Shown here piece by piece: positions 1,735-64,000 of a DNA stretch of 64,000 bases. The translations under genes were made by a program, and so were the position numbers. Location: sequence record PQ471516.1; one strand, given 5' to 3'. How positions within the stretch are numbered: position 1 is the stretch's first letter; the number at the start of each line of letters is the position of its first letter. The notes below the pieces were generated by a model. It did not search any database and was not told the DNA's origin. It saw nothing but the letters and a program-made list of their open reading frames with translations.

Positions 1735-1738
1735 AATC

Positions 1739-3770: not shown

Positions 3771-4017
<247 letters not shown>

Positions 4018-4098: not shown

Positions 4099-4206
<108 letters not shown>

Positions 4207-4289
4207 AAATGATAAATAATACAGTAAGATGACCTCCCCTCAATACGAAAGAGTATGGAGACTTGTTGGTTATCTTACTTCTTAAATTA

Positions 4290-4362: not shown

Positions 4363-4364
4363 CA

Positions 4365-4446
<82 letters not shown>

Positions 4447-39009: not shown

Positions 39010-39021
39010 GGGGATACAAAG

Positions 39022-39372: not shown

Positions 39373-39373
39373 T

Positions 39374-39712: not shown

Positions 39713-39714
39713 CA

Positions 39715-40023: not shown

Positions 40024-40034
40024 AGGATAATAAC

Positions 40035-42484: not shown

Positions 42485-42485
42485 T

Positions 42486-42695
42486 ATGGAAAAGTTTTAT
42501 AGTTCACTACTTCTATCTACTGAACTTGTATCATTTATGGTGTGCAAGACTAAGAAAGATTATTACATTAATAATCCAAATCCTTTAAATGATATAGAGC
42601 TATCACTTAAATTTGTAAATTGTACTGAAAATATATTAAAGTACAACAATAAAGTTTATTTTAATGTATTGAAATTGATATTTGTATATAACTAA
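42486..42695 (+). CDS. hypothetical protein
   Basis: GAGG SD. Confidence 0.65.
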   Translation: MEKFYSSLLLSTELVSFMVCKTKKDYYINNPNPLNDIELSLKFVNCTENILKYNNKVYFNVLKLIFVYN

Positions 42696-43929: not shown

Positions 43930-44001
43930 AAAATCCTCCTTTATTCATTATACTATATTTAGCCAAAAAGGAAAAGCCAGTACTTGAGTACTGGCATTAT
44001 A
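43930..44001 (-). repeat. array spacer R1 (terminator-late promoter-SD)
   Basis: GCCAGTAC-TCAA-GTACTGGC-T tract-TAAATATAGTATAAT-AAGGAGG. Confidence 0.9.
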
Positions 44002-45345: not shown

Positions 45346-45355
45346 ATATTCCTCC

Positions 45356-46535: not shown

Positions 46536-46606
46536 ATATTCCTCCTTTATTCATTATACTATATTTAATCAAAAAGAAAAGCCAGTACTTGAGTACTGGC
46601 TTTATC
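46536..46606 (-). repeat. array spacer R2
   Basis: Near-identical to R1. Confidence 0.9.
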
Positions 46607-47758: not shown

Positions 47759-47828
47759 ATTCCCTCCTTTATTCATTATACTATATTTAATCAAAAAGAA
47801 ATGCCAGTACTTGAGTACTGGCATTATG
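47759..47828 (-). repeat. array spacer R3
   Basis: Near-identical to R1. Confidence 0.9.
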
Positions 47829-49019: not shown

Positions 49020-49029
49020 ATTTCTCTCC

Positions 49030-50160: not shown

Positions 50161-50235
50161 AACTAAAATCTCCATATAATAATTATAATGTATTTACAAA
50201 AAAATACCAGCACATATTTCAGTACTGGTATAATG
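50161..50235 (-). promoter_or_regulatory. variant array spacer (terminator + TAAATACATTATAAT + GGAG)
   Basis: TACCAG...CTGGTA-T7 hairpin; same promoter shape. Confidence 0.75.
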
Positions 50236-51417
50236 TTATGGTAAAATAATAGCTTGTAACGAACTCATACCCAATGTTGGAACACTCGCCTGTGGTGCTG
50301 GTGCATTCACTTTTGGTGATGAAACCGCATAAGTCATTCCTGTACCCAAATCTGGATCAAAAACTACAGCACAATAATTCCCACTATATATAAGTCCATT
50401 CTTGTATCCTTGTGCACTTTGAATGCATTTCGTGAACGTACCAATATCTGTAGTGGCATTTATTAAGTTCCTCCCACGATAACCGCAGGTGTATATGAAA
50501 TTATCATCGCCTATGTACATACTAGAATCCCCAGAAGAACTACATAGATACGACATATAAGCACGCATGTTTTTAGGAGCAACTGACAATGTACCTGCAT
50601 AGAATTTATTATTCGAACCCGTAATATCACCATCACCCAATGCACCAAAACTTCCCCAGCCAGTACCGTAATATCTCTTATCACTCAAAAATATAATACA
50701 GTTGTTATTACACATCTTGATTTGATATATCAATGAAGGATCAACCCCAGGGAATGATTCAGTGTATGTTAGAACAGCCAGATCAGTACTAGCATTACAT
50801 TGATGATATGTATTAGTACCAGCAGACAATATTGTACCATCAACTAATAGAATCCTCGAAGTGCCAGTACCAGCAATACAAGCAACAGCATTACCTGCAC
50901 TTCCGGTGTATATTTGTCTGAAAGTAAAGAAACCAACAGTCTTACTCCCCTGTCCACTCCAACCAGTATTATCAACACCACATGCCCATACTGAACCATC
51001 TTGCATGATCATCATTACACCATAACGTTCTATTGAAATATAGACAATCTTCGTAGTATCAACTGCACTAAATCTAGAAGTTATATCAGTCCAAACCTTT
51101 ACACTCACCGCCGTCGCACCGAAAGTAGGATCTTCCCCTGCTATCATTATCCTACCATTGTTAGTCAGATACATTGTCTGACTATAACCAGTACTACAAA
51201 ACTTAACACTATCAGTCTCTGGAACTTTTAACCACTCGTTGTAACGTGTTACGTTAGTGTTATTACCTAACTGATAATAGTTATTCATCCCAGATACATA
51301 TAACACACCATCCTTTATTAAACTATAAGTCGCACTATAGTCACTACAGGTATAACGTGTACCCACAGGTCGCTCAACGACGTTCCCATAATCAAACATT
51401 CTAACAAAAGGTAACAT
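50236..51417 (-). CDS. beta-propeller, array gene 7
   Basis: GMNNYYQLG, GTNTYHQC. Confidence 0.85.
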   Translation of the reverse strand: MLPFVRMFDYGNVVERPVGTRYTCSDYSATYSLIKDGVLYVSGMNNYYQLGNNTNVTRYNEWLKVPETDSVKFCSTGYSQTMYLTNNGRIMIAGEDPTFGATAVSVKVWTDITSRFSAVDTTKIVYISIERYGVMMIMQDGSVWACGVDNTGWSGQGSKTVGFFTFRQIYTGSAGNAVACIAGTGTSRILLVDGTILSAGTNTYHQCNASTDLAVLTYTESFPGVDPSLIYQIKMCNNNCIIFLSDKRYYGTGWGSFGALGDGDITGSNNKFYAGTLSVAPKNMRAYMSYLCSSSGDSSMYIGDDNFIYTCGYRGRNLINATTDIGTFTKCIQSAQGYKNGLIYSGNYCAVVFDPDLGTGMTYAVSSPKVNAPAPQASVPTLGMSSLQAIILP

Positions 51418-51489
51418 AATTCCCTCCTTTATTCATTATACTATATTTAATCAAAAAGAAATACCAGTACTCAAGTACTGGCATTGTGT
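51418..51489 (-). repeat. array spacer R4
   Basis: Near-identical to R1. Confidence 0.9.
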
Positions 51490-52668
51490 TTATCTAAAAG
51501 GTACGCACTTTTTGAATTTAAATATATATCCAGTCTCACCTTGTTCAGTGAAGTACCCAGGGTTTCCAGTCCAGTATAAATCCTCACCTATACTAACTAC
51601 CGATACTGAACCATTACCAATTGAACCAAACCACTCAACATGTGATAAGTCAACACTATCATCAAAGAATTCTATTGGTAATATTGAACCATAATTCCCA
51701 GAGACTGCGTTGCGGCCTAAACCAGCACCATTAGAATTATATCCCTTACCATTCGTATTAATAATGTTAGTACTGGATTTTATTGCATTAACATAGGATA
51801 CTGGTGAAAGTTTATCGAATGAATTTGCTGTTATATCGGTATAGGGATTTGTAGTAAATGATGATCTTATGATACCAGTATTTTCAGACCCACCTATAGT
51901 CAACTGTGTGTTCCAACCAGCCGCCATTAAAGACAAAGCAGATGTACTACTTTGAACAATCAAACGTGTTACCCATCGTGTAGCTTGTACTGCAATTACC
52001 TGAGAACTTCCAAGATTCAATGTAGTAAAAGTAGTAATTGGATTATTATCACCTGTTCCTAATTGATAAAAAGTATTCTCACCACAACGATAATATATAC
52101 CATCTTTTATATAGTGAAAGTTTCTGCTCATTTCACTAGATGCAATTGCAGTTACACTAGTGTCAATTAAGAGTGGAGATGTAATTGGTGCAGTTGCTGT
52201 ACCCAATTCACTTGCACCATTCATGCCTATACCATATAACTGACTGTCACTTGTGAGTATTAGCATAGAATTGTTAGTACTGGTTGTAGATGTTATTTTT
52301 ATATCTTTTATAGAACTCGGAGAAATAGATCCAAAATATGATTCACAACGAGTCCATGTTGAAACAGAAGATGATATACCAAAAACTGAGTTAGTCCCAC
52401 TATAGTACAATTCCCCTTGTTTTGTTCTAATTATAGTACAATATAAAGAACTCCAGAAATCATCAACACTATAAGGACATAAAACCCATCTATTAAAAAA
52501 GATGAACCAGTAACTCCCATTTTTGCTGATTGGTTTCCGTCCACGCATATATAATGACCCGTCACTATATAATACGCTTATTGAATTTTCATCACTATTA
52601 ATTTTAACAACAGTATCTTTGACAGGGGCAACATTCCCATAATCAAACAATCTAACAAAAGGTAACAT
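51490..52668 (-). CDS. beta-propeller, array gene 8
   Basis: GMNGASELG, GENTFYQLG. Confidence 0.85.
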   Translation of the reverse strand: MLPFVRLFDYGNVAPVKDTVVKINSDENSISVLYSDGSLYMRGRKPISKNGSYWFIFFNRWVLCPYSVDDFWSSLYCTIIRTKQGELYYSGTNSVFGISSSVSTWTRCESYFGSISPSSIKDIKITSTTSTNNSMLILTSDSQLYGIGMNGASELGTATAPITSPLLIDTSVTAIASSEMSRNFHYIKDGIYYRCGENTFYQLGTGDNNPITTFTTLNLGSSQVIAVQATRWVTRLIVQSSTSALSLMAAGWNTQLTIGGSENTGIIRSSFTTNPYTDITANSFDKLSPVSYVNAIKSSTNIINTNGKGYNSNGAGLGRNAVSGNYGSILPIEFFDDSVDLSHVEWFGSIGNGSVSVVSIGEDLYWTGNPGYFTEQGETGYIFKFKKCVPFR

Positions 52669-52739
52669 ATATTCCTCCTTTATTCATTATACTATATTTA
52701 ATCAAAAAGAAAAGCCAGTACTCAAGTACTGGCATTTTT
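52669..52739 (-). repeat. array spacer R5
   Basis: Near-identical to R1. Confidence 0.9.
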
Positions 52740-53909
52740 TTAAATTGGCGAGTCCAACACAAACTCTAACGTATTTGGACCACCATAAGTCACATATGTA
52801 CCTGAACTATATACGAAATTACCATCAGTAATATAAGTACGATAGTATGATCCAGCCATTTGTGCCTTACTATAATCAAACCCATCAGGTACGATTGCTT
52901 TGGTATATACTAATGCATTCTTAGATGTACCAATACCTAACATACCAGCTTGCGTAGATTGATTGTAGCCGCAACAATATATACCATCTGTTGTAGCAAT
53001 AACTTGGTTATAATATGAAGTATTGTTAGCAATACTTACTACATCACCGGGTGGCATTAGTGAAGCAGTTTGAACCTCAAATGCTCTATAATCACTGAGA
53101 GAACCATTTGTCCCATCTGCTTGTGCACCAAATATTCTCGAACCGCCATTTGCGATGATGGTTTTACCAGTGGGATCAGTACCAATTGCCATTGCCATTG
53201 AAGTACTATTCTCCACATAGTACTTGATATTAATTGTATTTCTTAAGCTGGTAGGAGCACCATAATATATATTATATAACTTACCTCCTGAACTTGTAAC
53301 TGCATTTACTCTTCCTGTATAAAATAGCCATCCTTGGTTTGTAACATAACCGTGCATTAAATTACTTGCAAACAATTTAACAGGTAATTGATTTGCTGCG
53401 GTCGGAACAGTACTTTTGACGAATCTACGAGCAATATTGTTAGTTGTTGTCCCATCACCCAACTGACCATCCGACCCTACTCCAGTACTCCATATTGTTT
53501 GGTCTGATAGTAACACACTTGTAGTCTGATAACTAACGGCTATATCTAATATTGGTAATGTTAATGTATTGAATGTTGGCATAGCAGAAGTCCATATTGA
53601 TACTGCTGCCCCTGGCATACCAACAGTTGTTGAACTTCCACTGTACCATATTTCATTATTGCTTTTCTTAACAACTATCGACGTGGTTCCCATCCAAAAA
53701 TCTTCAACACCAGAAGTACTAAAAGTCCATGTAGTAACAGTATTTTCGTGACCTAAACCCAAAATACCATTTGTATTATCACCACGCACATATAAATCAC
53801 CACTGTTTGTTAAAACAGCAACATTATAGTTGTTAGTAAGTATTTTTTTAATATTTGGTTTAGCAGGTGCAACATTTCCATAATCAAACAATCTCACAAA
53901 AGGTAACAT
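52740..53909 (-). CDS. beta-propeller, array gene 9 (closest to gene 5)
   Basis: Start moved; GDNTNGILG, GSDGQLGDG. Confidence 0.85.
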   Translation of the reverse strand: MLPFVRLFDYGNVAPAKPNIKKILTNNYNVAVLTNSGDLYVRGDNTNGILGLGHENTVTTWTFSTSGVEDFWMGTTSIVVKKSNNEIWYSGSSTTVGMPGAAVSIWTSAMPTFNTLTLPILDIAVSYQTTSVLLSDQTIWSTGVGSDGQLGDGTTTNNIARRFVKSTVPTAANQLPVKLFASNLMHGYVTNQGWLFYTGRVNAVTSSGGKLYNIYYGAPTSLRNTINIKYYVENSTSMAMAIGTDPTGKTIIANGGSRIFGAQADGTNGSLSDYRAFEVQTASLMPPGDVVSIANNTSYYNQVIATTDGIYCCGYNQSTQAGMLGIGTSKNALVYTKAIVPDGFDYSKAQMAGSYYRTYITDGNFVYSSGTYVTYGGPNTLEFVLDSPI

Positions 53910-53978
53910 AATTCCTCCTTTATTCATTATACTATATTTAATCCAAAAGAAAAGCCAGTACTTTGTACTGGCATTATA
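53910..53978 (-). repeat. array spacer R6
   Basis: Loop AAA, otherwise as R1. Confidence 0.9.
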
Positions 53979-55118
53979 TTATTTCCACGGTAGAAGTGAA
54001 TCAGGAACCCTTGTTGGTACAGTAGTTGAAGACATTCCAGTAAGATTGGGTACACCACATGTGTATAAATTATCATATTCATCCACTAACATCGTATAGG
54101 AATAGCTCTTACAAAAACTACTAACATTACGAACTTCTAATGCAGTAAGATCCATTTCAGTGAATGATGTTATATACATATCAGTTGTACCAATACCACA
54201 TTGACCATTTGAATTAAGACCACATGAAAATAACTTATTATTATTTTTAATTATACAGGATGGCCCTGTAAGGTTTGTCCCAAGCTCACCCACCAACTCT
54301 ACTTCGCCTTGGAATGATAAATTTGGAATTAATGTACTCATTGGGGCTACTGACCTATTTCCTGTACCTGCTTGTCCATATTCATTAGTAGATGCAACTT
54401 TAACATTACCATCATTAAGAAATATATAAGAAGTTTCATTTGTATTTACTGCTTTAATTGCATTACTAATTGAAGTATCTTGTGTAAATATGAGCAAGTT
54501 TTGTGTCGTCGTTCCTGATACAAACGTATTACCTGCATACCAATATGAACCATCATTTAGAACTAATCCAGTACTACGTATTGCACAACCAGCACTGATA
54601 ACATTTTCTATTGTACTATAGGTGAATTGTGTAACGCTTGAAGTTGATCCATTTCCAAAAACACCACCAGTGCCAGCACCACAGTAGAACCACTTTCCAT
54701 TTTTTAAAAATACACGCATACACGAAGATATTACAATACTATCAATATCATCTGCACTGACTCCGATATCAGCAAAGTGCTGTGTTACATCAATCCAAAC
54801 ACCGTTAGTGTTTGAAGATATCACCGGAATAACAGTACGTCTACCAGTGTACCAAATAGTACCATCTTTCTTAATAGCAATCGTTCCTTGTACCCCGACC
54901 CAATATCGTACAATATTTGAGTTGACAAGAGTCCATTCAGTTGAAGAATCCAATGAACCATTACCACCTTGACCATATGCTGAAGAACCAAACCAGTATA
55001 GATAGCCATTTGTGTGTAAATAAAATTTGGCATCAGCAGAGCATTGTAACCTATTTTTAGGTAGGATCGGTTCAGGAGCGATATTCCCGTAATCAAACAA
55101 TCTAACAAAAGGTAACAT
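53979..55118 (-). CDS. beta-propeller, array gene 10
   Basis: GSSAYGQGG, GLNSNGQCG. Confidence 0.85.
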   Translation of the reverse strand: MLPFVRLFDYGNIAPEPILPKNRLQCSADAKFYLHTNGYLYWFGSSAYGQGGNGSLDSSTEWTLVNSNIVRYWVGVQGTIAIKKDGTIWYTGRRTVIPVISSNTNGVWIDVTQHFADIGVSADDIDSIVISSCMRVFLKNGKWFYCGAGTGGVFGNGSTSSVTQFTYSTIENVISAGCAIRSTGLVLNDGSYWYAGNTFVSGTTTQNLLIFTQDTSISNAIKAVNTNETSYIFLNDGNVKVASTNEYGQAGTGNRSVAPMSTLIPNLSFQGEVELVGELGTNLTGPSCIIKNNNKLFSCGLNSNGQCGIGTTDMYITSFTEMDLTALEVRNVSSFCKSYSYTMLVDEYDNLYTCGVPNLTGMSSTTVPTRVPDSLLPWK

Positions 55119-55130
55119 ATTTCCTCCTTA

Positions 55131-56027
55131 TTATTTAAAAACATACTGCGTATTAACACGAGTACCATTGTCAAAACCAAGTACGTAAAATATTTCAGCA
55201 CTATTATTAGAACCAAATAATGCACCCGTACTATTACTCAAAGTAGTATTAACTGCTAAGGCAATCCATATGTCTTCTTCTGTATCGTATCTCAATAAAT
55301 TTAATGCACCAAACGATACTGCATATATATGTTTATCATATCTATTGTAAATTATTTTACTAGGGTTAGGACCACCAACCGATGCTATGTTCGACCATAC
55401 CCCACTCTCTATATGATATTTTTGTGCAGTACTAACACCTTGACCCGTAATATATATGTAAGTACCATCCGTACACATATCACCACCTCCAGTGTTATTT
55501 GTACCATCGCTTGTACCTAATGATGACCATGTATTAGTACTAGGAGTATAACTGTATAACGAATTATTAGAAGGAGATCCCCACAAATATAACTTATCCC
55601 CAGCATTAATCATCTTACTATACGCCAGTTGACTAGGCTTCCCAATACTGTTAGTGTTCAGAATCCAGGTATTTGTACTTATATTATATACATAAAAATT
55701 ATTAGAACTATTACCACTACCACCAAACAAATATATTTTTCCCTGATAAGCACATAACGCACTACCAAATGTAGATACAGGTGCATTGGCTAATTGTAGC
55801 CACGTTCTAGTAGTTAAATTAAAACTCCATAACTGATTATCCGTCGTCACCGTATTCTGTATACCACCAAATATATAAGCAGTATTCTTTTCCGCATCAT
55901 ATGTATAACCAAAGTTATTTCGTGCTGAAGGTACGGGTGTTGTAGTAAATGGGGATCGTACTCCACCATTGTTGGCATATGGTGGTACAACATTCCCATA
56001 ATCAAACAATCTCACAAAAGGTAACAT
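55131..56027 (-). CDS. Kelch-repeat beta-propeller, array gene 11 (same N-terminal tag)
   Basis: YIFGG...W and IYLFGG...YNISTNTW Kelch repeats; start moved. Confidence 0.88.
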   Translation of the reverse strand: MLPFVRLFDYGNVVPPYANNGGVRSPFTTTPVPSARNNFGYTYDAEKNTAYIFGGIQNTVTTDNQLWSFNLTTRTWLQLANAPVSTFGSALCAYQGKIYLFGGSGNSSNNFYVYNISTNTWILNTNSIGKPSQLAYSKMINAGDKLYLWGSPSNNSLYSYTPSTNTWSSLGTSDGTNNTGGGDMCTDGTYIYITGQGVSTAQKYHIESGVWSNIASVGGPNPSKIIYNRYDKHIYAVSFGALNLLRYDTEEDIWIALAVNTTLSNSTGALFGSNNSAEIFYVLGFDNGTRVNTQYVFK

Positions 56028-56098
56028 AATTCCTCCTTTATTCATTATACTATATTTACCCCAAAAAGAAATGCCAGTACCTGAGTACTGGCATTATA
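56028..56098 (-). repeat. array spacer R7
   Basis: Near-identical to R1. Confidence 0.9.
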
Positions 56099-57208
56099 TT
56101 ATTTTGGTAAATCAATTTTAGTAAAGACTGCAACATCTGCACTTGCACCTGGTATTGCATAAAATATACCAGTACTATATACATCCCCGTCTTTGGTTAA
56201 TAATGATGTTAATCCGTCACTAAAAGCAACATCACTAATCTCACTAACTTCTACAGGTAATTGTAAATTGGTAGCACTATAGATAGCACCCGTTTGAGAA
56301 TTGTTTAATCCCAAACCACGGTTTGCCCCAATACCTTTCTGATATGCACTGGTTAGTATAATTTGCGTAGCCGTGCTTGTTGCCTCTGAATTTGTCATAA
56401 ACAAAGGTGAATTATTAGGTAAAGTACTTACAGGAACTGCTTTGAATGTAGTTGAATCTGAACTAAGAAAGTTTGGAGTTGTACCACATGTGAAATATGA
56501 TGTAGCATTATAGTAATTGAGTGTATGACCACCAATAGCTGCATCTATTACACCAGAACTACGCAGTCCCCAAATGTTAACTTGTGTTCTGTCCCCTGTG
56601 CCATGTAACCCACGGTCATTCCACCCTGAACTATATAACTTATTATCTAAGGTAATATACATACTATCATTGGAAGTTGACATCACTTTACGCACATTAG
56701 AAGCACATAGTGTTAATGTATATATTGATGAAGAACCAATCCCCAATACACCACGGTATCCATTAGCCCCAGCACCATAGAGTACTGAACTTGAACTGAG
56801 TACAAATATTACACCACCATTGCATACAATATTAGCAATTTGATTCACAGGAATTGTATTTGTAAACCACTCCGTTCTATCAACTAATGTAGTACTGTAA
56901 GAAGTTGTTGTTGATGATGTGAACCAATATGTTTCACCGGATGTCCATATCGTATTGTCATTTTTAATAATAACAAGTGTTCGTCCTCCAGTGAAAAAAT
57001 TAGAAACATCTGCACTTACTAATATCCATGAAGATACCGTGTTTTTATTACCATTTCCAGATTCACCACCTTGATTTCTGCCTATGTAATATAATTCATG
57101 TGAATCAGTCAATACGAATTGACCTTGTGTAGAAGCACCAACTTTAATTATATTTTTAGGACCAGGGGTAATATTCCCATAATCAAACAGTCTTACAAAA
57201 GGTAACAT
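56099..57208 (-). CDS. beta-propeller, array gene 12
   Basis: GRNQGGESG, GWNDRGLHG. Confidence 0.85.
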   Translation of the reverse strand: MLPFVRLFDYGNITPGPKNIIKVGASTQGQFVLTDSHELYYIGRNQGGESGNGNKNTVSSWILVSADVSNFFTGGRTLVIIKNDNTIWTSGETYWFTSSTTTSYSTTLVDRTEWFTNTIPVNQIANIVCNGGVIFVLSSSSVLYGAGANGYRGVLGIGSSSIYTLTLCASNVRKVMSTSNDSMYITLDNKLYSSGWNDRGLHGTGDRTQVNIWGLRSSGVIDAAIGGHTLNYYNATSYFTCGTTPNFLSSDSTTFKAVPVSTLPNNSPLFMTNSEATSTATQIILTSAYQKGIGANRGLGLNNSQTGAIYSATNLQLPVEVSEISDVAFSDGLTSLLTKDGDVYSTGIFYAIPGASADVAVFTKIDLPK

Positions 57209-57217
57209 AATTCCCTC

Positions 57218-58420
57218 CTATTGTTGCCATAACTGCGTTGGCATTAATGTTAGTGTAGTAATACTATAAGTGCCATCAGGCAATCTACCACCATTACCAT
57301 TCCAGCCACCACATGCATATAATTTATAATCTTTAGTAATTATTATGGTTCTGCTCCAATCTTTAGATGCCATAAGAACATTGTCATAACCACCACTTAT
57401 TGCACTAAGATTAAAAATATTCCAGGTTCTAACTAATGTATTAGTTCCATTACCTTCTTGACCATATGAGTTAGCACCACTACTTCTAACATATGATGGG
57501 TATTGTGCCATAGGTGAACCAATTGATGAAGTTCCCATATTACTTGGACAAATAAAATTACTGTACTTACTTACATCAACCGTGACCGATGTGTTCCTAA
57601 TTGGTGTTAGCTGATTTACAGATGTAGTCGTACCATTACCAGCTTCTCCTGTATTGTTAACCCCGCTATAATATACAGGCCCACCAGTAGTAAACCACCA
57701 AGTAACATTGTATGTAGCACTAATATGTTCTACATCACTAATCACATATTTGTTCAAATATATCATAGAACTACCACCACAACCACTTTCACCGAAGTTA
57801 TCCTTACCACAAAACCATGCCTGTTTATTTGATTTAATATAGTGCGTTCCTTGTAATGAACATGCCATATCAATAACTTCACCCATATTAGTCATAACTG
57901 TTAGTGTAGGTATGGAATTTTGATTACCAGACCCACATTCACCATTAGTATTTTTTCCACACGCAATTACTCTATTATCGGTTAATAATATTCTAGTACT
58001 TTCACCTATATATACACTCTTGATCATATTAGCCATGACGCCAATTTTATTAAATGAAGAAGTAACATCAGTCCATGTTCTCAAATAACCACCAACAGGT
58101 GTTGCATCTCCATAATCAGAAAATGCAGCCACCGACCCAGTGTAGTATATTTTATTATCCAAATCAATCATCAATGAACCATGAACACCAAGCCAATAGG
58201 CTGCACAGTTCCTTGCAAGTACTGTAAATGACGAAACTGCTGCTGAATTCCCAAGACCCAATTGAGACAAGTTATTACTACCATAACCATATAAAGTATT
58301 AGTTGGGCTATGTAGATACATACAGTTTGTATAATGTTGTTGTAAAACATTTGAGAACTCTATTGGTTCTGGCCCTGGTGCAATATTCGCGTACTTAACC
58401 ATTCTAGCAAAAGGTAACAT
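57218..58420 (-). CDS. beta-propeller, array gene 13 (MLPFARMVKYAN)
   Basis: GSNNLSQLG, GKNTNGECG; closest to gene 10. Confidence 0.85.
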   Translation of the reverse strand: MLPFARMVKYANIAPGPEPIEFSNVLQQHYTNCMYLHSPTNTLYGYGSNNLSQLGLGNSAAVSSFTVLARNCAAYWLGVHGSLMIDLDNKIYYTGSVAAFSDYGDATPVGGYLRTWTDVTSSFNKIGVMANMIKSVYIGESTRILLTDNRVIACGKNTNGECGSGNQNSIPTLTVMTNMGEVIDMACSLQGTHYIKSNKQAWFCGKDNFGESGCGGSSMIYLNKYVISDVEHISATYNVTWWFTTGGPVYYSGVNNTGEAGNGTTTSVNQLTPIRNTSVTVDVSKYSNFICPSNMGTSSIGSPMAQYPSYVRSSGANSYGQEGNGTNTLVRTWNIFNLSAISGGYDNVLMASKDWSRTIIITKDYKLYACGGWNGNGGRLPDGTYSITTLTLMPTQLWQQ

Positions 58421-58520
58421 ATATTCCTCCTTTATTTGTTATATCATATTTACCCAAAATAAAAACCCTTGACACGCTTCTTGGACTAATGTAGAATAGA
58501 AAGAAATTAAGGAGAAATGT

Positions 58521-58766
58521 ATGAACAATTTAACAGATCACTACCAAGAACTTAGTCAAAGTACTAAGAACTATATGAGCTACATGAACGCAGAAGATTT
58601 CGCAGTCTTCCTCGGAAAATTCTGTGCAATCAATACCCTCCAAAAAAGTACCAGTACTACAAGTGTACTTATGTTGAATTGCTTTATAGAGAACATTCTG
58701 GATGAACTTCAAAGCCCAAACGAAAGTAAACGATTCATGAACCTTTTGTTACTGGCATCTATATGA
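58521..58766 (+). CDS. small protein, family H (divergent)
   Basis: AAGGAG SD after a sigma70 promoter. Confidence 0.75.
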   Translation: MNNLTDHYQELSQSTKNYMSYMNAEDFAVFLGKFCAINTLQKSTSTTSVLMLNCFIENILDELQSPNESKRFMNLLLLASI

Positions 58767-58972
58767 CTCAAGAACAAATTATGCAGTATTACCTATGTGC
58801 TATATCAAAAGAACATCTGAATAGCATAGGGCATCAACAAATTATACTTGCAAATGCGAAACGTTCGGCACTTCTGCTTAACTCCATCAGAAATAACCTC
58901 ATAAGGAATTTTCTGGAAGGTAACGAATCTATGCAGTACTATTTCATCTTAACACTACTAATCGAGTACTAA
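58763..58972 (+). CDS. small protein, family H
   Basis: EQIMQYY...YYFILTLLIEY. Confidence 0.75.
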   Translation: MTQEQIMQYYLCAISKEHLNSIGHQQIILANAKRSALLLNSIRNNLIRNFLEGNESMQYYFILTLLIEY

Positions 58973-59176
58973 ATGAATAAAGAACAAATATTTCAGTACT
59001 ACAACAGTTCTCTGTCAAAAGGTCTACAGGAAAGTATAGCAGTTGAGTCTGCAATACTACATAACCTTAATGCAGTAGAATTCACAAACCGAATCACAAG
59101 GCACGCACAAAATGCTTTACAAGGACATGAAACCTTGAGATACTATCACATCATCGTGCTTTGTATGGAGGTATAA
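58973..59176 (+). CDS. small protein, family H
   Basis: EQIFQYY...YYHIIVL. Confidence 0.75.
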   Translation: MNKEQIFQYYNSSLSKGLQESIAVESAILHNLNAVEFTNRITRHAQNALQGHETLRYYHIIVLCMEV

Positions 59177-59184
59177 CAGAACAA

Positions 59185-59376
59185 ATGAATCCAGAACATC
59201 TAGAGTACTACAAGACATTCATGAACCACAAGGATCAGTACAGTTACAATACTGCAATGGGGCATTTCCGTTATCATTCCAATAAAATGCAAAAGCACAC
59301 ACTAACACTATGGACTGTACAAGCACAACGAGACGAACTACGATTGTGTGCTATAATTAAAATCCTGAACATCTAA
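59185..59376 (+). CDS. small protein, family H
   Basis: MNPEHLEYY; GGAGG SD. Confidence 0.75.
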   Translation: MNPEHLEYYKTFMNHKDQYSYNTAMGHFRYHSNKMQKHTLTLWTVQAQRDELRLCAIIKILNI

Positions 59377-59384
59377 GGAACACT

Positions 59385-59576
59385 ATGTACGAGCACAAAG
59401 AACAGTACTTAAACACTCTACCTAAAGATATACAAAGATCATTCCCTTGTGCTCCGTGGGATTTAAACAGTAAATGGGGTTTTATTGAGTTCTATAACGA
59501 TGTATGTATTGTACTGGAAAGTAAGTCCCTCTCAATGCAGTACTGTTCAATCTTGAACCTAATTTTTAAGTACTAA
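59385..59576 (+). CDS. small protein, family H
   Basis: MYEHKEQY..LP...IFKY. Confidence 0.8.
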   Translation: MYEHKEQYLNTLPKDIQRSFPCAPWDLNSKWGFIEFYNDVCIVLESKSLSMQYCSILNLIFKY

Positions 59577-59580
59577 AACT

Positions 59581-59760
59581 ATGCAAACATTCTATACAGA
59601 TAGACTAAGCCTTAGAGATACTTTTATGTACGAAACCTTTGTTAAGTACTATAACTTAGGTACGCATACTACAAAGAATATTAATTTACATCACTGCACA
59701 CACTCAGCAGTACATGACCACGATCCGTACAGATACATCTTAGCCCTTTTAAGTATATAA
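59581..59760 (+). CDS. 59-aa protein, family H-like
   Basis: Hand translation MQTFYTDRLS...YRYILALLSI. Confidence 0.6.
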   Translation: MQTFYTDRLSLRDTFMYETFVKYYNLGTHTTKNINLHHCTHSAVHDHDPYRYILALLSI

Positions 59761-59769
59761 GGAACACTA

Positions 59770-60444
59770 ATGAGACTCAATAATTACAGTAAACAATACC
59801 TAAAGCATTTTAAGTACCTCAAAAGCATACAGGCTGAATCTATTAGCAGCAGCTACGTTTACAGCCCTAATGTACTAAAACAATTAAAGTACAAGAAAGA
59901 AAAATTATCAAAGAACCTCAAAAAGTTTCTTAAGCACAAAGACGCAAAGATTCAGTACTTGAACATTAAAAACGATCATGCAGTACTAAGCCTCAATACA
60001 AGTCTTAAGAATCTGGATAACTCTTCATTTATGCTTGAGTTCAATATCAATGAAAATACTCCAGCAGTTTTTACTATTGCGTATAATAAAGCACAAATCT
60101 TTTTAGGTGCAAAAACCGCACTTAAACTCAGTAAAGCACAATTCTGTTTAGGTGATCAGTACTACGTAGGTATTGTACACATAGAACTCGAAAAAGATAT
60201 GTACTTCGGTAGTACCCACGATAATCCAGAACATAAAGATACTATTGACTTCTTCAGGAATCTCCCTAAAGAGTATTCAGAAGATGAAATGTTCCAGTGG
60301 AGTACTATTATTAAAGACCCACATCTTTGCTACGAAGTGTATAAGAAAGTACAAGGGATTAAACAAATGATTAAAGAAAATAAAAAAATGTACCAACTCT
60401 TGCAGTTCTTAACCGGAGAAAATCTAATTGTTCAAAGACCATAA
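59770..60444 (+). CDS. family F protein with basic N-terminal extension
   Basis: SEDEMFQWSTIIK. Confidence 0.8.
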   Translation: MRLNNYSKQYLKHFKYLKSIQAESISSSYVYSPNVLKQLKYKKEKLSKNLKKFLKHKDAKIQYLNIKNDHAVLSLNTSLKNLDNSSFMLEFNINENTPAVFTIAYNKAQIFLGAKTALKLSKAQFCLGDQYYVGIVHIELEKDMYFGSTHDNPEHKDTIDFFRNLPKEYSEDEMFQWSTIIKDPHLCYEVYKKVQGIKQMIKENKKMYQLLQFLTGENLIVQRP

Positions 60445-60622
60445 AGAGTACTACAGAAATCAACTCCCAAAGGAATGGCAAATAACATTAGAAACTAACC
60501 TAGCACAGATATATACCCAGAAGTTTCTTGCTATGACATGGGAGCACTGCATTGAGTCAGTACTGAATTCTTCAAATGAATCACAATATCTCAATACTCT
60601 TTTACTTGTATATAAATTCTAA
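60428..60622 (+). CDS. small protein, family H
   Basis: DHKEYY..QLP...VYKF; TTG start. Confidence 0.7.
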   Translation: MFKDHKEYYRNQLPKEWQITLETNLAQIYTQKFLAMTWEHCIESVLNSSNESQYLNTLLLVYKF

Positions 60623-60635
60623 AAAGGAATAACAA

Positions 60636-60842
60636 ATGCAATTCCATGAACATATGGAGTACTACAGAAAACAACTACCAGAACCTTTATCGATGATAAT
60701 CGGTTCCAGAAGTTTAATAAGTAATCCCAATTTTCATATGCGTAGTCACTATAAATGTACTGCTTCAATTTGTAATGGAACTGCTTACAATGAACCGAAC
60801 CAGCATCTATACCAAATCCTTAAACTAATATATCAGTACTAA
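60636..60842 (+). CDS. small protein, family H
   Basis: EHMEYY..QLP...LIYQY. Confidence 0.8.
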   Translation: MQFHEHMEYYRKQLPEPLSMIIGSRSLISNPNFHMRSHYKCTASICNGTAYNEPNQHLYQILKLIYQY

Positions 60843-60845
60843 ATC

Positions 60846-61037
60846 ATGCACGAATACAAAGAGTACTACAAAAATAAACTACCAAAATTTCTACAACACC
60901 ATATACCAGATGAAGCACTAGGAATAAATCTGGAGTACACACATATAATGTTCAATCAATGCACTAAAGGATTTCTTACAGATGTTGATGAGCAATGCAG
61001 GGTGTACTATTTCCTCGCACTAATATATAGGTACTAA
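60846..61037 (+). CDS. small protein, family H
   Basis: EYKEYY..KLP...LIYRY. Confidence 0.8.
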   Translation: MHEYKEYYKNKLPKFLQHHIPDEALGINLEYTHIMFNQCTKGFLTDVDEQCRVYYFLALIYRY

Positions 61038-61040
61038 ATC

Positions 61041-61220
61041 ATGCACAACGATTTCTATATACAAAAACTTATCGACGCTGGCCTGGAAAGCTTCCCGTTA
61101 AATCATGTACAAACAAAAGGATTGCACTGGTACTTCATTCCCTGTACTAAAGCATGTATAAACCCCAGCAATTACAAGGATCTATACCACAATATATTAA
61201 TACTCGCATTGAGGTACTAA
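61041..61220 (+). CDS. 59-aa protein, family H
   Basis: Hand translation MHNDFYIQKL...ILALRY. Confidence 0.75.
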   Translation: MHNDFYIQKLIDAGLESFPLNHVQTKGLHWYFIPCTKACINPSNYKDLYHNILILALRY

Positions 61221-61223
61221 ATT

Positions 61224-61406
61224 ATGCAAGAACACCTGGAGTACTACAGAAGCCATCTCCCAAAGAAGGCACAAAGAAACTTCGACCAACAATATATAAA
61301 CCAAAAGAATCAGTTCTATAATGCATTCTATTCGTCTATGAAAACTATTGCTATACAAGGCAAAGACCCGTACTATAGCATCCTGAACATCATCTTCAAG
61401 TACTAA
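61224..61406 (+). CDS. small protein, family H
   Basis: MQEHLEYY..HLP...IFKY. Confidence 0.8.
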   Translation: MQEHLEYYRSHLPKKAQRNFDQQYINQKNQFYNAFYSSMKTIAIQGKDPYYSILNIIFKY

Positions 61407-61409
61407 ATT

Positions 61410-61595
61410 ATGTACAGAGACTTCTATATAAGTAAACTTAATCCTGTACTACAAACTCGTATTCCTCCGGTGAAATTTATCCTCAAAACAAAAGCACAAA
61501 TGTATGAGTTCAAAAAGTGTACAAAAGAAATACTCAGTACTAAAAGTAATAAGAACATATACTATCAAGTACTCGTCCTGACATTTAAGTACTAA
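61410..61595 (+). CDS. small protein, family H
   Basis: MYRDFYISKL...TFKY. Confidence 0.8.
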   Translation: MYRDFYISKLNPVLQTRIPPVKFILKTKAQMYEFKKCTKEILSTKSNKNIYYQVLVLTFKY

Positions 61596-61615
61596 AGTAC
61601 TAAAGGAATAAACAT

Positions 61616-61810
61616 ATGCAACACCAGCACAAATTGTACTATACACAATTTCTTAATCAACAACTACAACAATTTATACCCAATGAACCATTACCATATG
61701 ATCACCCCCTAGGTACACGCGTTTTCAAAAGAACTATTAATGAACTATTGAGTACTACCGACGACGATTCCCTGTACTACTGCTTAATTAAACTTATATA
61801 CAGGCACTAA
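61616..61810 (+). CDS. small protein, family H
   Basis: YYTQFL...LIYRH. Confidence 0.8.
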   Translation: MQHQHKLYYTQFLNQQLQQFIPNEPLPYDHPLGTRVFKRTINELLSTTDDDSLYYCLIKLIYRH

Positions 61811-61811
61811 T

Positions 61812-62006
61812 ATGCAACTCCTGCACAGAGAATACTACACACAATTCCTTAAAGAGAACTACAGAGATTCAGTTCCCGTAACTCCTTTCGACCCAAATAA
61901 CCCAAGTTCAATCTTCCTCTTTAATGACGCAACACGTACTGCACTCTGTACTACCAATAAACATTGGCACTACGCATTTGTACTTATACTTATATACAGA
62001 CACTAA
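61812..62006 (+). CDS. small protein, family H
   Basis: EYYTQFL...LIYRH. Confidence 0.8.
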   Translation: MQLLHREYYTQFLKENYRDSVPVTPFDPNNPSSIFLFNDATRTALCTTNKHWHYAFVLILIYRH

Positions 62007-62015
62007 GGCACTAAC

Positions 62016-62204
62016 ATGAATGAGCACAGAGAGTACTACATAAAGAAACTTCAATTGTACCAACAATCCTCTATACCTGAAGTTCCTTATAATATAAATG
62101 AGCACATTGGAGTAAAGATTAACTATAATAATACAGTACTAGAAATATTAAGTGCGGAAAATATAGATTACTACAATATTATAAAACTAATATATAGGTA
62201 CTAA
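62016..62204 (+). CDS. small protein, family H
   Basis: EHREYYIKKL...LIYRY. Confidence 0.8.
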   Translation: MNEHREYYIKKLQLYQQSSIPEVPYNINEHIGVKINYNNTVLEILSAENIDYYNIIKLIYRY

Positions 62205-62207
62205 ATC

Positions 62208-62393
62208 ATGCAAGAGCACAGAGAGTACTACATAAAGAAACTTCACCCAGACCTACGAGATACTATACCATTCGTTCCTCATAATATAAATGAACCTGTA
62301 GTGCAGTACTACTTTAATATAACAGTACAAGCCGCATTAAGTGAATATAGACTTGAGTACTTCACTGTACTGAAACTTATATATAAGTACTAA
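62208..62393 (+). CDS. small protein, family H
   Basis: EHREYYIKKL...LIYKY. Confidence 0.8.
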   Translation: MQEHREYYIKKLHPDLRDTIPFVPHNINEPVVQYYFNITVQAALSEYRLEYFTVLKLIYKY

Positions 62394-62458
62394 CATATTG
62401 ACATAGAGTACAGGAATGATATACTACATCCTATACAGAATCAATACAGAGATAACAT

Positions 62459-62668
62459 ATGCAAGAACATAAAGATTTCTATGTAAGCCAACTCCCCGTA
62501 CTAGACCAATTCTGGTTAGCTGATTCTACACCTTGTAATACAGATACTAAGTACGGACAACTGTGCTTTATTGAATCTATAAAGAAAGTACTACACCAAG
62601 ATAAAACTAAGTACTGTAAAGAAAAAGACTTGTACTTTAATATAGTAGAACTTACCTTTATGTTCTAG
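62459..62668 (+). CDS. small protein, family H
   Basis: MQEHKDFY..QLP; own sigma70 promoter. Confidence 0.8.
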   Translation: MQEHKDFYVSQLPVLDQFWLADSTPCNTDTKYGQLCFIESIKKVLHQDKTKYCKEKDLYFNIVELTFMF

Positions 62669-63773
62669 TACAGGATAGTATAGGATACTAAGGACTAGAT
62701 GTGTTCCTAGGGAAGCATTATAACAGGCTTTAACATCTCGTAAAGATGTTAAAATTCAGCCTGGACAAATGCGATCACTAGGATTCTATCTAGGCTGAAT
62801 CCCGTAATCACAAGTACGCATATGTAATCATATATAAACATTTCTATAATCATATCCAATCACAGTAGTGATTAGTATTGAGTACTAGAGTACAGGAATG
62901 TGCACGTTTAATCAAGAACGTATCAGAATGATTCAGTACTGTCCTAAAAGTATTCAGTACTGAAGGTGTCGATATGTCACTAAGTAGGCAGAGGAAGTCT
63001 GCCGTACTTTGTAGTTTCCAAGCTCCTTTTCCATTTTGCAAATTACATCAAAAGTAATCAAAAGTAATCACACAATGATTAGTACTGAATTATTACTTTC
63101 ACCTTAATTCCAGTTACCCCTTGAGGCTCCAGCAAAAAGTTGGTTAGTACTCCATCCTAAATCTCGATCCTAAAAATTTTGGAGTACCTATGAAATAAAA
63201 GTTGGATCTTCGAAAATTGAAATTTACGTTGGGATGATTAGGATTTGTGAACTATAATGTAGTTCAAGTTGGAGTACAGAGTGAGAACAATCTAGAGTAC
63301 TGAAAGATGAAATAACATCTTGACAATACAATTCAGTACTGTATAATGTTGTACATAGGGTGAGGGAACAGCGGCAACAGTTCCTTAATCTCAGTATCAT
63401 GTCGTGAGACATTACGCAAGTTATATCCTCCTGTGCATAGTACTGGTGGTTATCTCTTGAACCTCATTTTCTCGTAAACTAAACAGTACTGATATTAACA
63501 GAATGGTAGCAGTACTGATATTAATCTAATGCATTATGCCACCAGCACAAGCTGGTGGATTCCCTCTAACAGTATTCAGTATTACATGATGGTCTTCATC
63601 CTCCTGGGGTAACATAGTGAAGGTTATGATGGCAGTACTGAATACTCCTTTCACAAGATAGATCTATGGTATAGTACTGACGGATTTTGGGCGTAGTTAC
63701 CCTGGGTGGATTTTGGACGTAGATATGTCTAGCCCTCCAGAAGTCTGGAAGTAAAGATGGCTATCCCTCTAGG

Positions 63774-63869
63774 CGGCTGGATGGCTAGATTTCTAGATGG
63801 CTGTATGGCTAGACGTTTGGACGGCTAAACGGCTAGATGGTTACACGTCTGGATGTATAGACGGCTAAA
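63774..63869. repeat. tandem array of 12 degenerate 8-mers, consensus YGGCTAGA
   Basis: cggctgga tggctaga tttctaga tggctgta tggctaga cgtttgga cggctaaa cggctaga tggttaca cgtctgga tgtataga cggctaaa. Confidence 0.85.
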
Positions 63870-64000
63870 TCAAAATTTTTATTTTGTTTTTTCCAATAGT
63901 TCCCCTACCGCGTGGGGATAGTTTCCCCGCAGTATCTGGAGTTAGATTTTTCTGAATCTGGAATCATTATCTTATAAACTGGGGGCAATGTCAACGGCCT

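What the first reader, a model, noticed from the sequence alone, without database searches (positions are those of the whole stretch)
58521..62668. About 17 tandem ~60-aa paralogs joined by a GTACTAAAT(C/T)ATG stop-start junction
Seen: conserved ends (MQEHxEYY..xLP and Y..I(L/I).L(I)Y(K/R)Y) around a hypervariable middle. The last Tyr codon plus stop form (A/G)GTACTAA, followed by AT(C/T)ATG with no SD at junctions before 60846, 61041, 61224, 61410 and 62208. Inference: a second shuffling array in which the GTAC palindrome marks unit boundaries, translated by re-initiation and encoding a variable-loop mini-binder library, possibly anti-defence and expressed very early.
Basis: partly seen in the sequence, partly recalled or inferred. 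Interest (0 to 1): 0.7.

Follow-up and report, generated by a model that had tools for sequence, protein, structure and literature searches.

The report
Tandem family of tiny early phage genes
A 350-kb E. coli jumbo phage carries a row of about 17 related, fast-diverging genes for 60-residue helical proteins, probably switched on first in infection; it is a real but uncharacterised gene family that grows and shrinks by whole units, not a programmed shuffling device.

Summary
The window is Escherichia phage Turkey5 (Asteriusvirus-like, 351 kb). At 58521-62668 (+) lie 18 back-to-back ORFs. The five quoted GTACTAAAT(C/T)ATG junctions are exact.

The genes are real:
- dN/dS is 0.19-0.31.
- AlphaFold gives a confident four-helix mini-fold (pLDDT 86.5) with no PDB match.
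- The family occurs only in Asteriusvirus arrays (24 hits among 1.84 billion representatives).

A conserved sigma-70-type promoter precedes the row. Tight junctions lack Shine-Dalgarno sites and spaced junctions have them, which fits one early, partly translationally coupled operon.

Across 9 phages and 4 further informative contigs the order is strictly collinear. Whole units come and go (15-20 copies), and one breakpoint lies in a 33-nt block shared by neighbouring units. The array is a divergence island: units are 20-59% identical while the flanks are 82-91% identical.

GTAC does not mark boundaries. It is enriched throughout the region and genome-wide (z=10 against synonymous shuffles). 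Function (host take-over or anti-defence binders) remains an inference.

Verdict: observation confirmed, interpretation partly supported, moderate interest.

The parts
58469..58497 (+). Sigma-70-type promoter of the array (TTGACA, 17 nt, TAGAAT). An A/T-rich stretch lies upstream and an AAGGAG SD downstream.
   Evidence: 11/12 match. The -35 hexamer and the SD are invariant in 9 phages (alignment A3).
58521..58766 (+). ORF1, 81 aa, first gene of the operon. A borderline, highly diverged family member.
   Evidence: hhalign probability vs the family is 14%; HMM E 0.02-0.05. A 75-81-aa ORF holds this position in all 9 phages.
58763..58972 (+). ORF2, 69 aa, family unit. Its ATG overlaps the stop of ORF1 (ATGA).
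   Evidence: Its ortholog is 51-56% identical in the 121Q clade.
58973..59176 (+). ORF3, 67 aa, family unit. Zero-nt gap (TAAATG).
59185..59376 (+). ORF4, 63 aa, family unit. GGAGGT SD core upstream.
59385..59576 (+). ORF5, 63 aa, family unit. TAAGGA SD core upstream.
   Evidence: One of the top HMM scores; the post-only profile scores it E 7e-16.
59581..59760 (+). ORF6, 59 aa, family unit. Not annotated in the deposited record.
   Evidence: Its ortholog is 54-58% identical and always sits just before the large ORF.
59770..60444 (+). ORF7, 224 aa. An unrelated protein embedded in the array (phrog_29152, unknown function).
   Evidence: E 2.7e-40. No relation to the small family (hhalign probability 0.1%). 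Present at the same relative place in all 9 phages. The AlphaFold model failed (pLDDT 38).
60428..60622 (+). ORF8, 64 aa, family unit. TTG start that overlaps the end of ORF7 by 17 nt, with GGAG 9 nt upstream.
60636..60842 (+). ORF9, 68 aa, family unit. AAGGA SD core upstream.
60846..61037 (+). ORF10, 63 aa, family unit. Tight junction; not annotated in the deposited record. This position is polymorphic (type a, type b, or both) among close relatives.
61041..61220 (+). ORF11, 59 aa, family unit. Tight junction; not annotated in the deposited record.
61224..61406 (+). ORF12, 60 aa, family unit. Tight junction.
61410..61595 (+). ORF13, 61 aa, family unit. Tight junction.
61616..61810 (+). ORF14, 64 aa, family unit. 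AAGGA SD core upstream.
61812..62006 (+). ORF15, 64 aa, family unit. 1-nt gap.
   Evidence: Its ortholog is 56-59% identical in the 121Q clade.
62016..62204 (+). ORF16, 62 aa, family unit. Present only in this phage among the 6 informative genomes and contigs of its lineage.
   Evidence: It shares an identical 33-nt 5' block with ORF17.
62208..62393 (+). ORF17, 61 aa, family unit. This is the protein that was modelled.
   Evidence: pLDDT 86.5, helices at 2-10, 14-17, 30-44 and 51-60.
62398..62425 (+). Second sigma-70-type promoter (TTGACA, 16 nt, TATACT), in the 65-nt gap before the last unit.
   Evidence: The -35 hexamer is also present in JNE01 and L010.
62459..62668 (+). ORF18, 69 aa, last family unit.
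   Evidence: Close variants occur on at least 16 public contigs.
62695..62790 (+). Conserved structured element just after the last stop. Possibly the 3' end of the operon transcript or a small RNA.
   Evidence: 84-100% identical in about 30 genomes. RNAalifold gives 24 pairs, 3 of them with compensatory double changes between the two clades, and G-U pairs that fit the + strand. No Rfam match.
42486..42695 (+). Tentative outlying family member (69 aa), directly after a 217-aa ORF (41831-42484) at the other end of the RCC1-like gene array.
   Evidence: Family HMM E 8.9e-6. phrog_11711 E 0.018. The 217-aa ORF resembles ORF7 only weakly (BLASTP E 0.13).

Best explanation
The region is one polycistronic operon of a genus-specific (Asteriusvirus) multigene family of 60-residue, soluble, aromatic-rich four-helix proteins. 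An unrelated 224-aa gene is embedded in it.

Shown:
- The genes are under purifying selection and keep their reading frames in every relative.
- They share a hydrophobic/aromatic core but differ widely in surface residues and net charge (-3 to +9).
- The family evolves by birth and death. Whole units are gained or lost by unequal homologous recombination within the conserved 5' and 3' blocks of neighbouring units, while order stays fixed.
- The array as a whole diverges far faster than its flanks.

Inferred:
- Host RNA polymerase transcribes the operon from a conserved consensus sigma-70 promoter at the very start of infection.
- Units separated by 8-20 nt use their own Shine-Dalgarno site.
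- Units separated by 0-4 nt are translated by coupling (termination followed by re-initiation).
- The proteins act as a diversified set of small binders against host factors (host take-over or counter-defence), each paralog with its own target. This would explain why paralogs differ greatly while each ortholog is conserved.

The GTAC richness is a separate, region- and genome-wide nucleic-acid signal, not part of the unit architecture.
For: Identity of the genome:
- 100% match to Escherichia phage Turkey5.

Coding:
- dN/dS is 0.19 for Tur5 vs JNE01. It is 0.31 over 163 ortholog pairs: N-terminal part 0.25, middle 0.41, C-terminal part 0.15.
- ORFs are intact in 9 phages and in the further contigs.
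- AlphaFold pLDDT is 86.5.

Family limits:
- 12 of 17 units hit phrog_11711; there is no Pfam hit.
- Only 24 hits at E<=0.001 were found among 1.84e9 representatives.
- All 30 database proteins recovered are >=80% identical to a unit of a known Asteriusvirus array.

Operon and early timing:
- Promoter and SD are conserved.
- No terminator-like site lies inside the array.
- The window holds 25 near-consensus sigma-70 sites, 24 on the + strand, against 4.9 in simulations.
- In the related phage CBB, RpoD-type promoters cluster in a region of short ORFs regarded as early (PMC5259590).
- None of the 62 proteins in the phAPEC6 virion proteome has the size or gene position of the units, whereas the neighbouring RCC1-like proteins are virion-associated (PMC7247149).

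Coupling:
- SD presence tracks spacer length.

Birth and death:
- ORF16 is unique to Tur5, and the relatives' single unit joins ORF16's 5' end to ORF17's body within a shared 33-nt block.
- Position 10 exists as type a, type b, or both.

Divergence island:
- Flanks are 82-89% nt identical to G17, but inside the array there are only short 67-73% patches.
- The RCC1-like neighbour is 90-92% aa identical against 20-59% for the units.

Surface diversity:
- pI ranges from 4.8 to 9.9.
Against: - There is no expression, translation or interaction data for any Asteriusvirus. I found no transcriptome in the literature searches.
- There is no homology or fold match to any known anti-defence, host take-over or other characterised protein.
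- dN/dS shows no positive selection at the coarse level tested, so an arms-race reading is not demonstrated. The pairs pooled are not phylogenetically independent.
- The strong GTAC bias shows that selection also acts on the nucleic acid, so part of the conservation may not be protein-level.
- A promoter match is not proof of timing.
Confidence: 0.6

Rival explanations
1. One reading: a programmed cassette-shuffling array in which the GTAC palindrome is the recombination or boundary signal, producing reordered or recombined units.
For: - 9 of 17 small units end in GTACTAA.
- Copy number varies.
- The one mapped crossover block contains a GAGTACTAC.
Against: - Order is identical in all genomes compared.
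- The 5'/3' discordance screen flagged only 3 of 145 units, and those were explained by N-terminal length differences. The one chimera actually seen is the relatives' single unit at position 16/17.
- No invertase or recombinase gene and no flanking inverted repeats were found.
- GTAC is as dense in the unit middles and in the unrelated 224-aa ORF as at the boundaries, and it is enriched genome-wide.
- The crossover is explained by 33 nt of plain homology.
Confidence: 0.04
2. The primary function is at the nucleic-acid level. The region would be a GTAC/AGTACT-dense stretch of DNA or early mRNA that serves as a binding platform, decoy or processing target for a factor recognising this palindrome, and the small ORFs would be secondary.
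For: - GTAC is 76 observed against 36.5 +/- 3.8 in synonymous-codon shuffles (z=10). The same holds in 8 relatives whose proteins are only 20-59% identical (z=7-10).
- Tyr codons are TAC 80 / TAT 34 in the array against 125/318 in other genes.
- CAGTACTG occurs 37 times in the window against 1.15 simulated. It abuts the -10 hexamer of several consensus promoters, and in most relatives it sits in the spacer of the array promoter.
Against: - dN/dS is well below 1, with the strongest constraint on the protein's core-forming ends.
- The fold is confident.
- Reading frames have been kept over deep divergence.
- GTAC excess, though weaker, is also found in unrelated genes (z=4-6), so it is not peculiar to this array.
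Confidence: 0.12
3. The small proteins serve the phage's own biology rather than acting on the host, for example as partners, chaperones or regulators of the adjacent, also expanded, RCC1-like beta-propeller proteins.
For: - The two arrays are neighbours, divergently oriented, in all 9 phages.
- A possible extra 'large ORF + small unit' pair lies at the far end of the RCC1-like array.
- RCC1-like proteins are virion-associated in phAPEC6.
Against: - The arrays have different promoters and strands, and the small units were not found in virions.
- The RCC1-like neighbour is 90-92% conserved where the small units are 20-59% identical, so the two do not co-diverge.
Confidence: 0.1
4. The array is a near-neutral by-product of tandem duplication in a large genome with slack packaging capacity, and the copies have no individual function.
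For: - Tandem duplication has been proposed as a route of jumbo-phage genome growth (cited in PMC7247149).
- Whole units are dispensable in some relatives.
Against: - Purifying selection acts on each ortholog.
- No stops or frameshifts were seen in about 145 units.
- SD or coupling signals are maintained at every junction.
- The paralogs are old, at 5-51% identity, not recent redundant copies.
Confidence: 0.06

Closest known systems
PHROG family phrog_11711 (unknown function), annotated as 'hypothetical protein' (e.g. 121Q gp249-gp265)
   Same: It is the same protein family: 12 of 17 units match, best E 1.5e-17. The same syntenic array is annotated in 121Q, G17, PBECO4, slurp01, A4, JNE01, SD-2_S15 and WPEC3.
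   Different: The PHROG carries no function. Five diverged units of this window fall below its threshold. Three units of this phage are not annotated at all in the deposited record.
Early regions of small ORFs behind RpoD-type promoters in related jumbo phages (vB_PcaM_CBB; PMC5259590), and the host-takeover gene module of Bacillus phage SPO1 and the plastic early regions of T4-like phages (the last two from my own knowledge)
   Same: Clusters of short genes of unknown function behind consensus host-type promoters, thought to act in the first minutes of infection. They are variable between related phages.
   Different: Those clusters are mostly unrelated genes. Here 16-17 genes are paralogs of one fold in an uninterrupted head-to-tail row, and timing has not been measured.
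Tandem paralog arrays of jumbo phages, e.g. the RCC1-like 'DNA condensation' proteins next door (11 copies in phAPEC6; PMC7247149)
   Same: Same genome, same mode of growth (tandem duplication), same copy-number differences between relatives.
   Different: The RCC1-like proteins are about 400 aa, have a known fold, are virion-associated and are 90-92% conserved. The small units are 60 aa, have a fold without known relatives, were not found in virions, and are far more diverged.
Anti-CRISPR and other anti-defence operons of phages (my own knowledge of the class)
   Same: Small, fast-evolving, lineage-restricted proteins encoded together behind a strong early promoter. Members are often gained and lost as cassettes.
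   Different: No sequence or fold similarity to any characterised member was found. No associated helix-turn-helix regulator gene was detected (for the units, for the 224-aa ORF). Those operons are not arrays of paralogs. No inhibition has been shown.
Copy-number-variable multigene families ('genomic accordions') of large DNA viruses (my own knowledge; named only)
   Same: Tandem paralogs that expand and contract by unequal recombination and diverge quickly relative to the core genome.
   Different: A different virus realm and unrelated proteins. Here the paralogs are old (5-51% identity), not recent amplifications, and no selective agent is known.

Membership tests
phrog_11711 small-protein family | Significant match to the family profile | tested here: met
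   12 of 17 units match at E<=0.01, best 1.5e-17. The other units link to the family through array-derived profiles (hhalign 97.7%). ORF1 stays borderline.
Tandem birth-and-death multigene family | Head-to-tail paralogs on one strand | tested here: met
Tandem birth-and-death multigene family | Copy-number polymorphism between close relatives, with breakpoints in homologous blocks | tested here: met
   ORF16 is present only in Tur5. The crossover lies within a shared 33-nt block. Position 10 exists as type a, type b, or both. The genus range is 15-20 units.
Programmed shuffling systems (shufflon, invertible cassettes, diversity-generating retroelements) | Site-specific recombinase or reverse transcriptase with matching repeats; variable order or orientation of cassettes | tested here: not met
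   Only short imperfect inverted repeats were found. All ORFs are on one strand and in the same order in every genome. No ORF in 57500-64000 besides the units, the 224-aa ORF and an RCC1-like gene is long enough to be such an enzyme.
Sigma-70-dependent early phage operon | Near-consensus -35/-10 promoter conserved in relatives, upstream of the first gene | tested here: met
   11/12 match. The -35 hexamer is invariant in 9 phages.
Sigma-70-dependent early phage operon | Transcription in the first minutes of infection by unmodified host polymerase | not testable with these tools
   No Asteriusvirus transcriptome was found.
Translationally coupled operon | Stop and start overlapping or within a few nt, without their own ribosome-binding site | tested here: met
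   In this window, 9 of 17 junctions have a gap <=4 nt (or an overlap). Across 9 phages, 80 of 154 junctions are tight and only 2 of those have a >=5-nt SD core, against 44 of 74 spaced junctions.
Translationally coupled operon | Downstream translation depends on upstream translation | not testable with these tools
   This needs expression data.
Anti-defence (e.g. anti-CRISPR) proteins | Homology or fold match to a characterised inhibitor, or an associated regulator gene | tested here: not met
   Nothing in Pfam, PHROGs with function, PDB sequences, PDB folds or BFVD apart from the family's own members. PADLOC gave only chance-level hits. This lowers 'is a known anti-defence protein', not 'works like one'.

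The most novel reading that the evidence does not exclude
The array is an evolving arsenal. One stable four-helix scaffold is displayed in 15-20 surface variants, each aimed at a different host protein (defence or housekeeping), and the repertoire is reshaped between lineages by unit gain, loss and replacement. Superimposed on it, a GTAC/CAGTACTG code constrains codon choice because a regulator, modification enzyme or RNase reads this palindrome throughout the early region. Both would be new: an unknown binder scaffold family, and an unknown cis-signal that is 2-fold above synonymous expectation in coding sequence.
Probability: 0.25. Interest if true: 0.7.

Novelty: new member of a known kind. 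Interest (0 to 1): 0.45.

Why it matters
Jumbo phages are mostly genes of unknown function. Here 4 kb of one genome, and the matching 4-5 kb in every member of the genus, is spent on a single family of tiny proteins that diverges several-fold faster than its surroundings. That pattern is a common signature of genes at the phage-host interface.

The family offers several things to work with:
- a compact, confidently predicted new fold;
- about 50 natural sequence types in only nine genomes;
- clear orthology anchors.

This makes it a tractable entry point for asking what early small proteins of Asteriusvirus do. The accompanying GTAC/CAGTACTG enrichment points to an undescribed regulatory or modification signal in these phages.

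If, on the other hand, the proteins turn out to have no distinct partners, the array is simply another example of genome growth by tandem duplication.

Tried and rejected
- Pfam, PHROGs, PADLOC, PDB sequence search, and Foldseek against PDB and BFVD for the small units gave no named relative.
- The 224-aa ORF matched only phrog_29152 (unknown function). It found 3 homologs in the word-indexed search, its AlphaFold model was unusable (pLDDT 38), and it has no PDB relative. I therefore did not run a fold search on it.
- I considered that the C-terminal third of the 224-aa ORF might be a fused small unit. hhalign gives probability 0.1%, so I rejected the idea.
- I considered that the 217-aa ORF at 41831 might be a paralog of the 224-aa ORF. 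BLASTP gives E 0.13 and it falls in a different PHROG, so this is left open.
- The search for related loci with the family alignment failed because no stretch was conserved enough. With the 224-aa ORF it returned only 121Q itself from IMG/VR.
- A screen for mosaic units by 5'/3' discordance flagged 3 of 145 units, all explained by N-terminal length differences.
- Tandem Repeats Finder sees no ~190-nt period.
- Rfam finds nothing in 57000-64000.
- Literature searches for a description of this family or for an Asteriusvirus transcriptome found none.
- Contig L015 has a run of N at the polymorphic position 10. I left it unfilled and did not use that site.

These are general bacterial motifs, not sequence of the element. 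Consensus lines printed by the alignment tools were not used.

Full report
WHAT THE WINDOW IS. The array region is 100% identical to Escherichia phage Turkey5 (PQ471516.1, 351 kb). Its nearest relative is vB_EcoM_JNE01 (96% identity), classified in Asteriusvirus, the 121Q/PBECO4 group of jumbo coliphages. The window has 34-38% G+C. It contains 25 near-consensus sigma-70 promoter matches, 24 of them on the + strand, against 4.9 in dinucleotide-matched simulations. It therefore looks like a host-polymerase-transcribed (early) part of the genome, as proposed for the related phage CBB (PMC5259590).

THE OBSERVATION. From 58521 to 62668 there are 18 consecutive + strand ORFs.
- Seventeen are small (59-81 aa).
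- One, at 59770-60444, encodes 224 aa and belongs to another family (phrog_29152, unknown function).
- Profiles built only from units downstream of the large ORF detect the upstream units and vice versa (hhalign probability 97.7%, E 1.4e-12). ORF1 is only marginally related.
- Conservation is concentrated at both ends. In 112 distinct units from nine phages, the column of residue 8 is Tyr in all of them, and column 57 is Leu in 103 of 111. The middle also has conserved core columns.
- Three units (ORF6, ORF10, ORF11) are not annotated in the deposited record.

ARE THEY GENES?
- Between Turkey5 and JNE01, pooled dN/dS over 16 ORF pairs (15 small units and the 224-aa ORF) is 0.19 (47.5 synonymous against 39.5 non-synonymous differences).
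- Over 163 ortholog pairs from nine phages it is 0.31. It is lowest in the C-terminal part (0.15), 0.25 in the N-terminal part, and highest but still below 1 in the middle (0.41). These pairs are not independent.
- No unit in any genome examined carries an internal stop.
- With a 33-sequence alignment, AlphaFold2 models ORF17 at mean pLDDT 86.5 as four helices: 2-10, 14-17, 30-44 and 51-60, with a long loop at 18-29.
- Foldseek finds no PDB match, and in BFVD only family members from 121Q-type phages. A profile search of PDB sequences finds nothing.
- The proteins are soluble and aromatic-rich (9-20% Tyr+Phe+Trp). Net charge runs from -3 to +9.

DISTRIBUTION.
- Twelve units match phrog_11711; none matches Pfam.
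- A full HMMER scan of 1.84 billion representatives returns 24 proteins at E<=0.001, all 59-69 aa.
- All 30 database proteins recovered are at least 80% identical to a unit of one of nine Asteriusvirus arrays.
- The same array occupies the same place in JNE01, A4, 121Q (gp249-gp265), G17, PBECO4, slurp01, Salmonella phage SD-2_S15 and WPEC3. That place is between a divergently oriented array of RCC1-like genes and a roughly 2-kb gene-free stretch.

HOW IT EVOLVES.
- Clustering units at 70% identity gives 52 groups in nine phages. Writing each array as a string of groups shows strict collinearity with presence or absence of whole units: 15 to 20 small units, always with the large ORF in the middle.
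- In the Turkey5 lineage (JNE01 and four informative metagenomic or assembly contigs), ORF16 is present only in Turkey5. Position 10 holds one of two 62-65% identical types, or both in tandem.
- The relatives' single unit at the ORF16/17 position carries the upstream junction and first codons of ORF16 and the body of ORF17. The switch lies in a 33-nt block that is identical in the two Turkey5 units. This is what an unequal homologous crossover, or a deletion between direct repeats, produces.
- No reordering was seen, and only this kind of chimera.
- Between Turkey5 and the 121Q clade only five positions keep >=45% identity (ORF2, ORF6, the 224-aa ORF, ORF10, ORF15). They remain in the same order.
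- The flanks are much more conserved. The RCC1-like neighbour is 90-92% identical in protein. The preceding 2.4 kb is 89% and the following 1.3 kb is 82% identical in DNA to G17. Inside the array only short 67-73% patches align.
The array is therefore a sharply bounded island of divergence.

EXPRESSION SIGNALS.
- TTGACA, 17 nt, TAGAAT at 58469-58497, with an A/T-rich upstream stretch and an AAGGAG site, precedes ORF1. The -35 hexamer and the ribosome-binding site are invariant in nine phages.
- A second promoter-like site (62398-62425) sits in the 65-nt gap before the last unit and is shared within the Turkey5 lineage.
- No terminator-like site lies within the array.
- Among 154 junctions in nine phages, 80 are tight (overlap to 4 nt). 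The commonest is GTACTAATATG, seen 29 times. Only 2 of the 80 have a >=5-nt Shine-Dalgarno core.
- The other 74 are spaced, and 44 of them have such a core.
- This dichotomy is the sequence-level signature of translational coupling at the tight junctions. The mechanism itself is inferred from established knowledge of polycistronic operons.
- The phAPEC6 virion proteome lists RCC1-like proteins but nothing of the units' size or gene position (PMC7247149). This is consistent with a non-structural role.

GTAC.
- The array has 18.8 GTAC per kb, against 8.5 in the rest of the window and about 3.3 expected from base composition.
- Shuffling synonymous codons within the array gives 36.5 +/- 3.8 against 76 observed (z=10). 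The arrays of eight relatives give z=7-10.
- Control gene sets also show an excess (z=4.0 and 5.8).
- All three codon phases contribute.
- Tyr codons are 70% TAC here against 28% in other genes, and 55% of the TAC codons follow a G.
- Only 9 of the 64 GTACs in small units are at the Tyr-stop, and the unrelated 224-aa ORF has 17.8 per kb.
- GTAC is thus a regional and genome-wide nucleic-acid feature, not a boundary mark.
- The longer palindrome CAGTACTG occurs 37 times in the window against 1.15 simulated. It abuts the -10 hexamer of consensus promoters at 1461, 30189, 32638 and 63320. It lies in the spacer of the array promoter in seven of nine phages, though not in Turkey5 or JNE01.
- What reads it is unknown.

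INTERPRETATION. The best-supported reading is an early, partly translationally coupled operon of a genus-specific birth-and-death family of small four-helix proteins. The step from there to 'diversified binders of host factors' is inference. It rests on four points: a shared core with diverse surfaces and charges; strong divergence between paralogs but constraint within orthologs; a divergence island between conserved flanks; and an early-type promoter. Rival readings are scored in the report sections: programmed shuffling, a nucleic-acid-level role, a role with the RCC1-like proteins, and neutral duplication. The first is contradicted by the collinearity and by the GTAC distribution.

COMPARISON AND NOVELTY. 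Tandem paralog arrays and early clusters of small ORFs are known kinds in large phages (PMC7247149, PMC5259590). This family is present in databases as 'hypothetical protein' and phrog_11711, but I found no description of it. It is a new, uncharacterised member of a known kind. It stands out for its copy number, its tiny unit size, a fold without relatives, and the sharp divergence island. Interest is moderate.

Noticed in passing
whole window; densest at 58400-64000: GTAC, AGTACT and CAGTACTG are strongly over-represented. GTAC is 592 against 253 simulated, AGTACT is 164 against 20 expected in 1-58400, and CAGTACTG is 37 against 1.15. TTCAGTACTG directly abuts the TATAAT of consensus promoters at 1461, 30189, 32638 and 63320. 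This may be an operator, a modification site or an RNA-processing site.
   Followed up: partly
window 1-64000: There are 25 sigma-70 promoter matches of at least 11/12, 24 of them on the + strand, against 4.9 expected. The window looks like an early, host-polymerase-transcribed region.
   Followed up: partly
window 62695-62790 (+): A conserved structured element follows the array directly. It is 84-100% identical in about 30 genomes. Three helix pairs carry compensatory double changes between clades, and G-U pairs favour the + strand. It has no Rfam family.
   Followed up: partly
window 62669-64000: A gene-free stretch, about 2 kb in relatives, is conserved at 78-91% identity. It holds many (T/C)AGTACTG(A) sites, a perfect 12/12 promoter at 63320-63347, and iteron-like GGCTAGAT repeats at 63768-63840 (Tandem Repeats Finder periods 16 and 24). 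It may contain an origin, a packaging site or small RNAs.
   Followed up: no
window 41831-42695 (+): A 217-aa ORF (phrog_34359) is followed 1 nt later by a 69-aa ORF that weakly matches the small-unit family (HMM E 8.9e-6). This may be a second 'large + small' pair at the other end of the RCC1-like array.
   Followed up: partly
window 42724-58420 (-): Thirteen tandem paralogs of 264-447 aa are annotated as RCC1/Kelch-type proteins in the deposited record; the two tested match the RCC1-like beta-propeller Pfam domain. Each appears to have its own repeated upstream region. Homologs are virion-associated in phAPEC6 (PMC7247149).
   Followed up: partly
window 38680-41447 (+): A further run of about eight adjacent ORFs of 100-125 aa has hydrophobic segments and basic C-termini. 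They look like another tandem paralog family, of membrane proteins.
   Followed up: no
window 59581-59760, 60846-61037, 61041-61220: Three intact family units are not annotated as genes in the deposited Turkey5 record.
   Followed up: yes
window 60636-61595: ORF9 to ORF13 are all in one reading frame, separated only by a TAA stop and one codon (3-nt gaps). In the 121Q clade the usual gap is 1 nt instead.
   Followed up: no
window 219-4443: A cluster of six tRNA genes: Gly, Ser x2, Asn, Thr x2.
   Followed up: no
L015:2620-2700 approx.: This metagenomic scaffold has a run of N exactly at the copy-number-polymorphic position 10. It was left unfilled and that site was excluded.
   Followed up: yes
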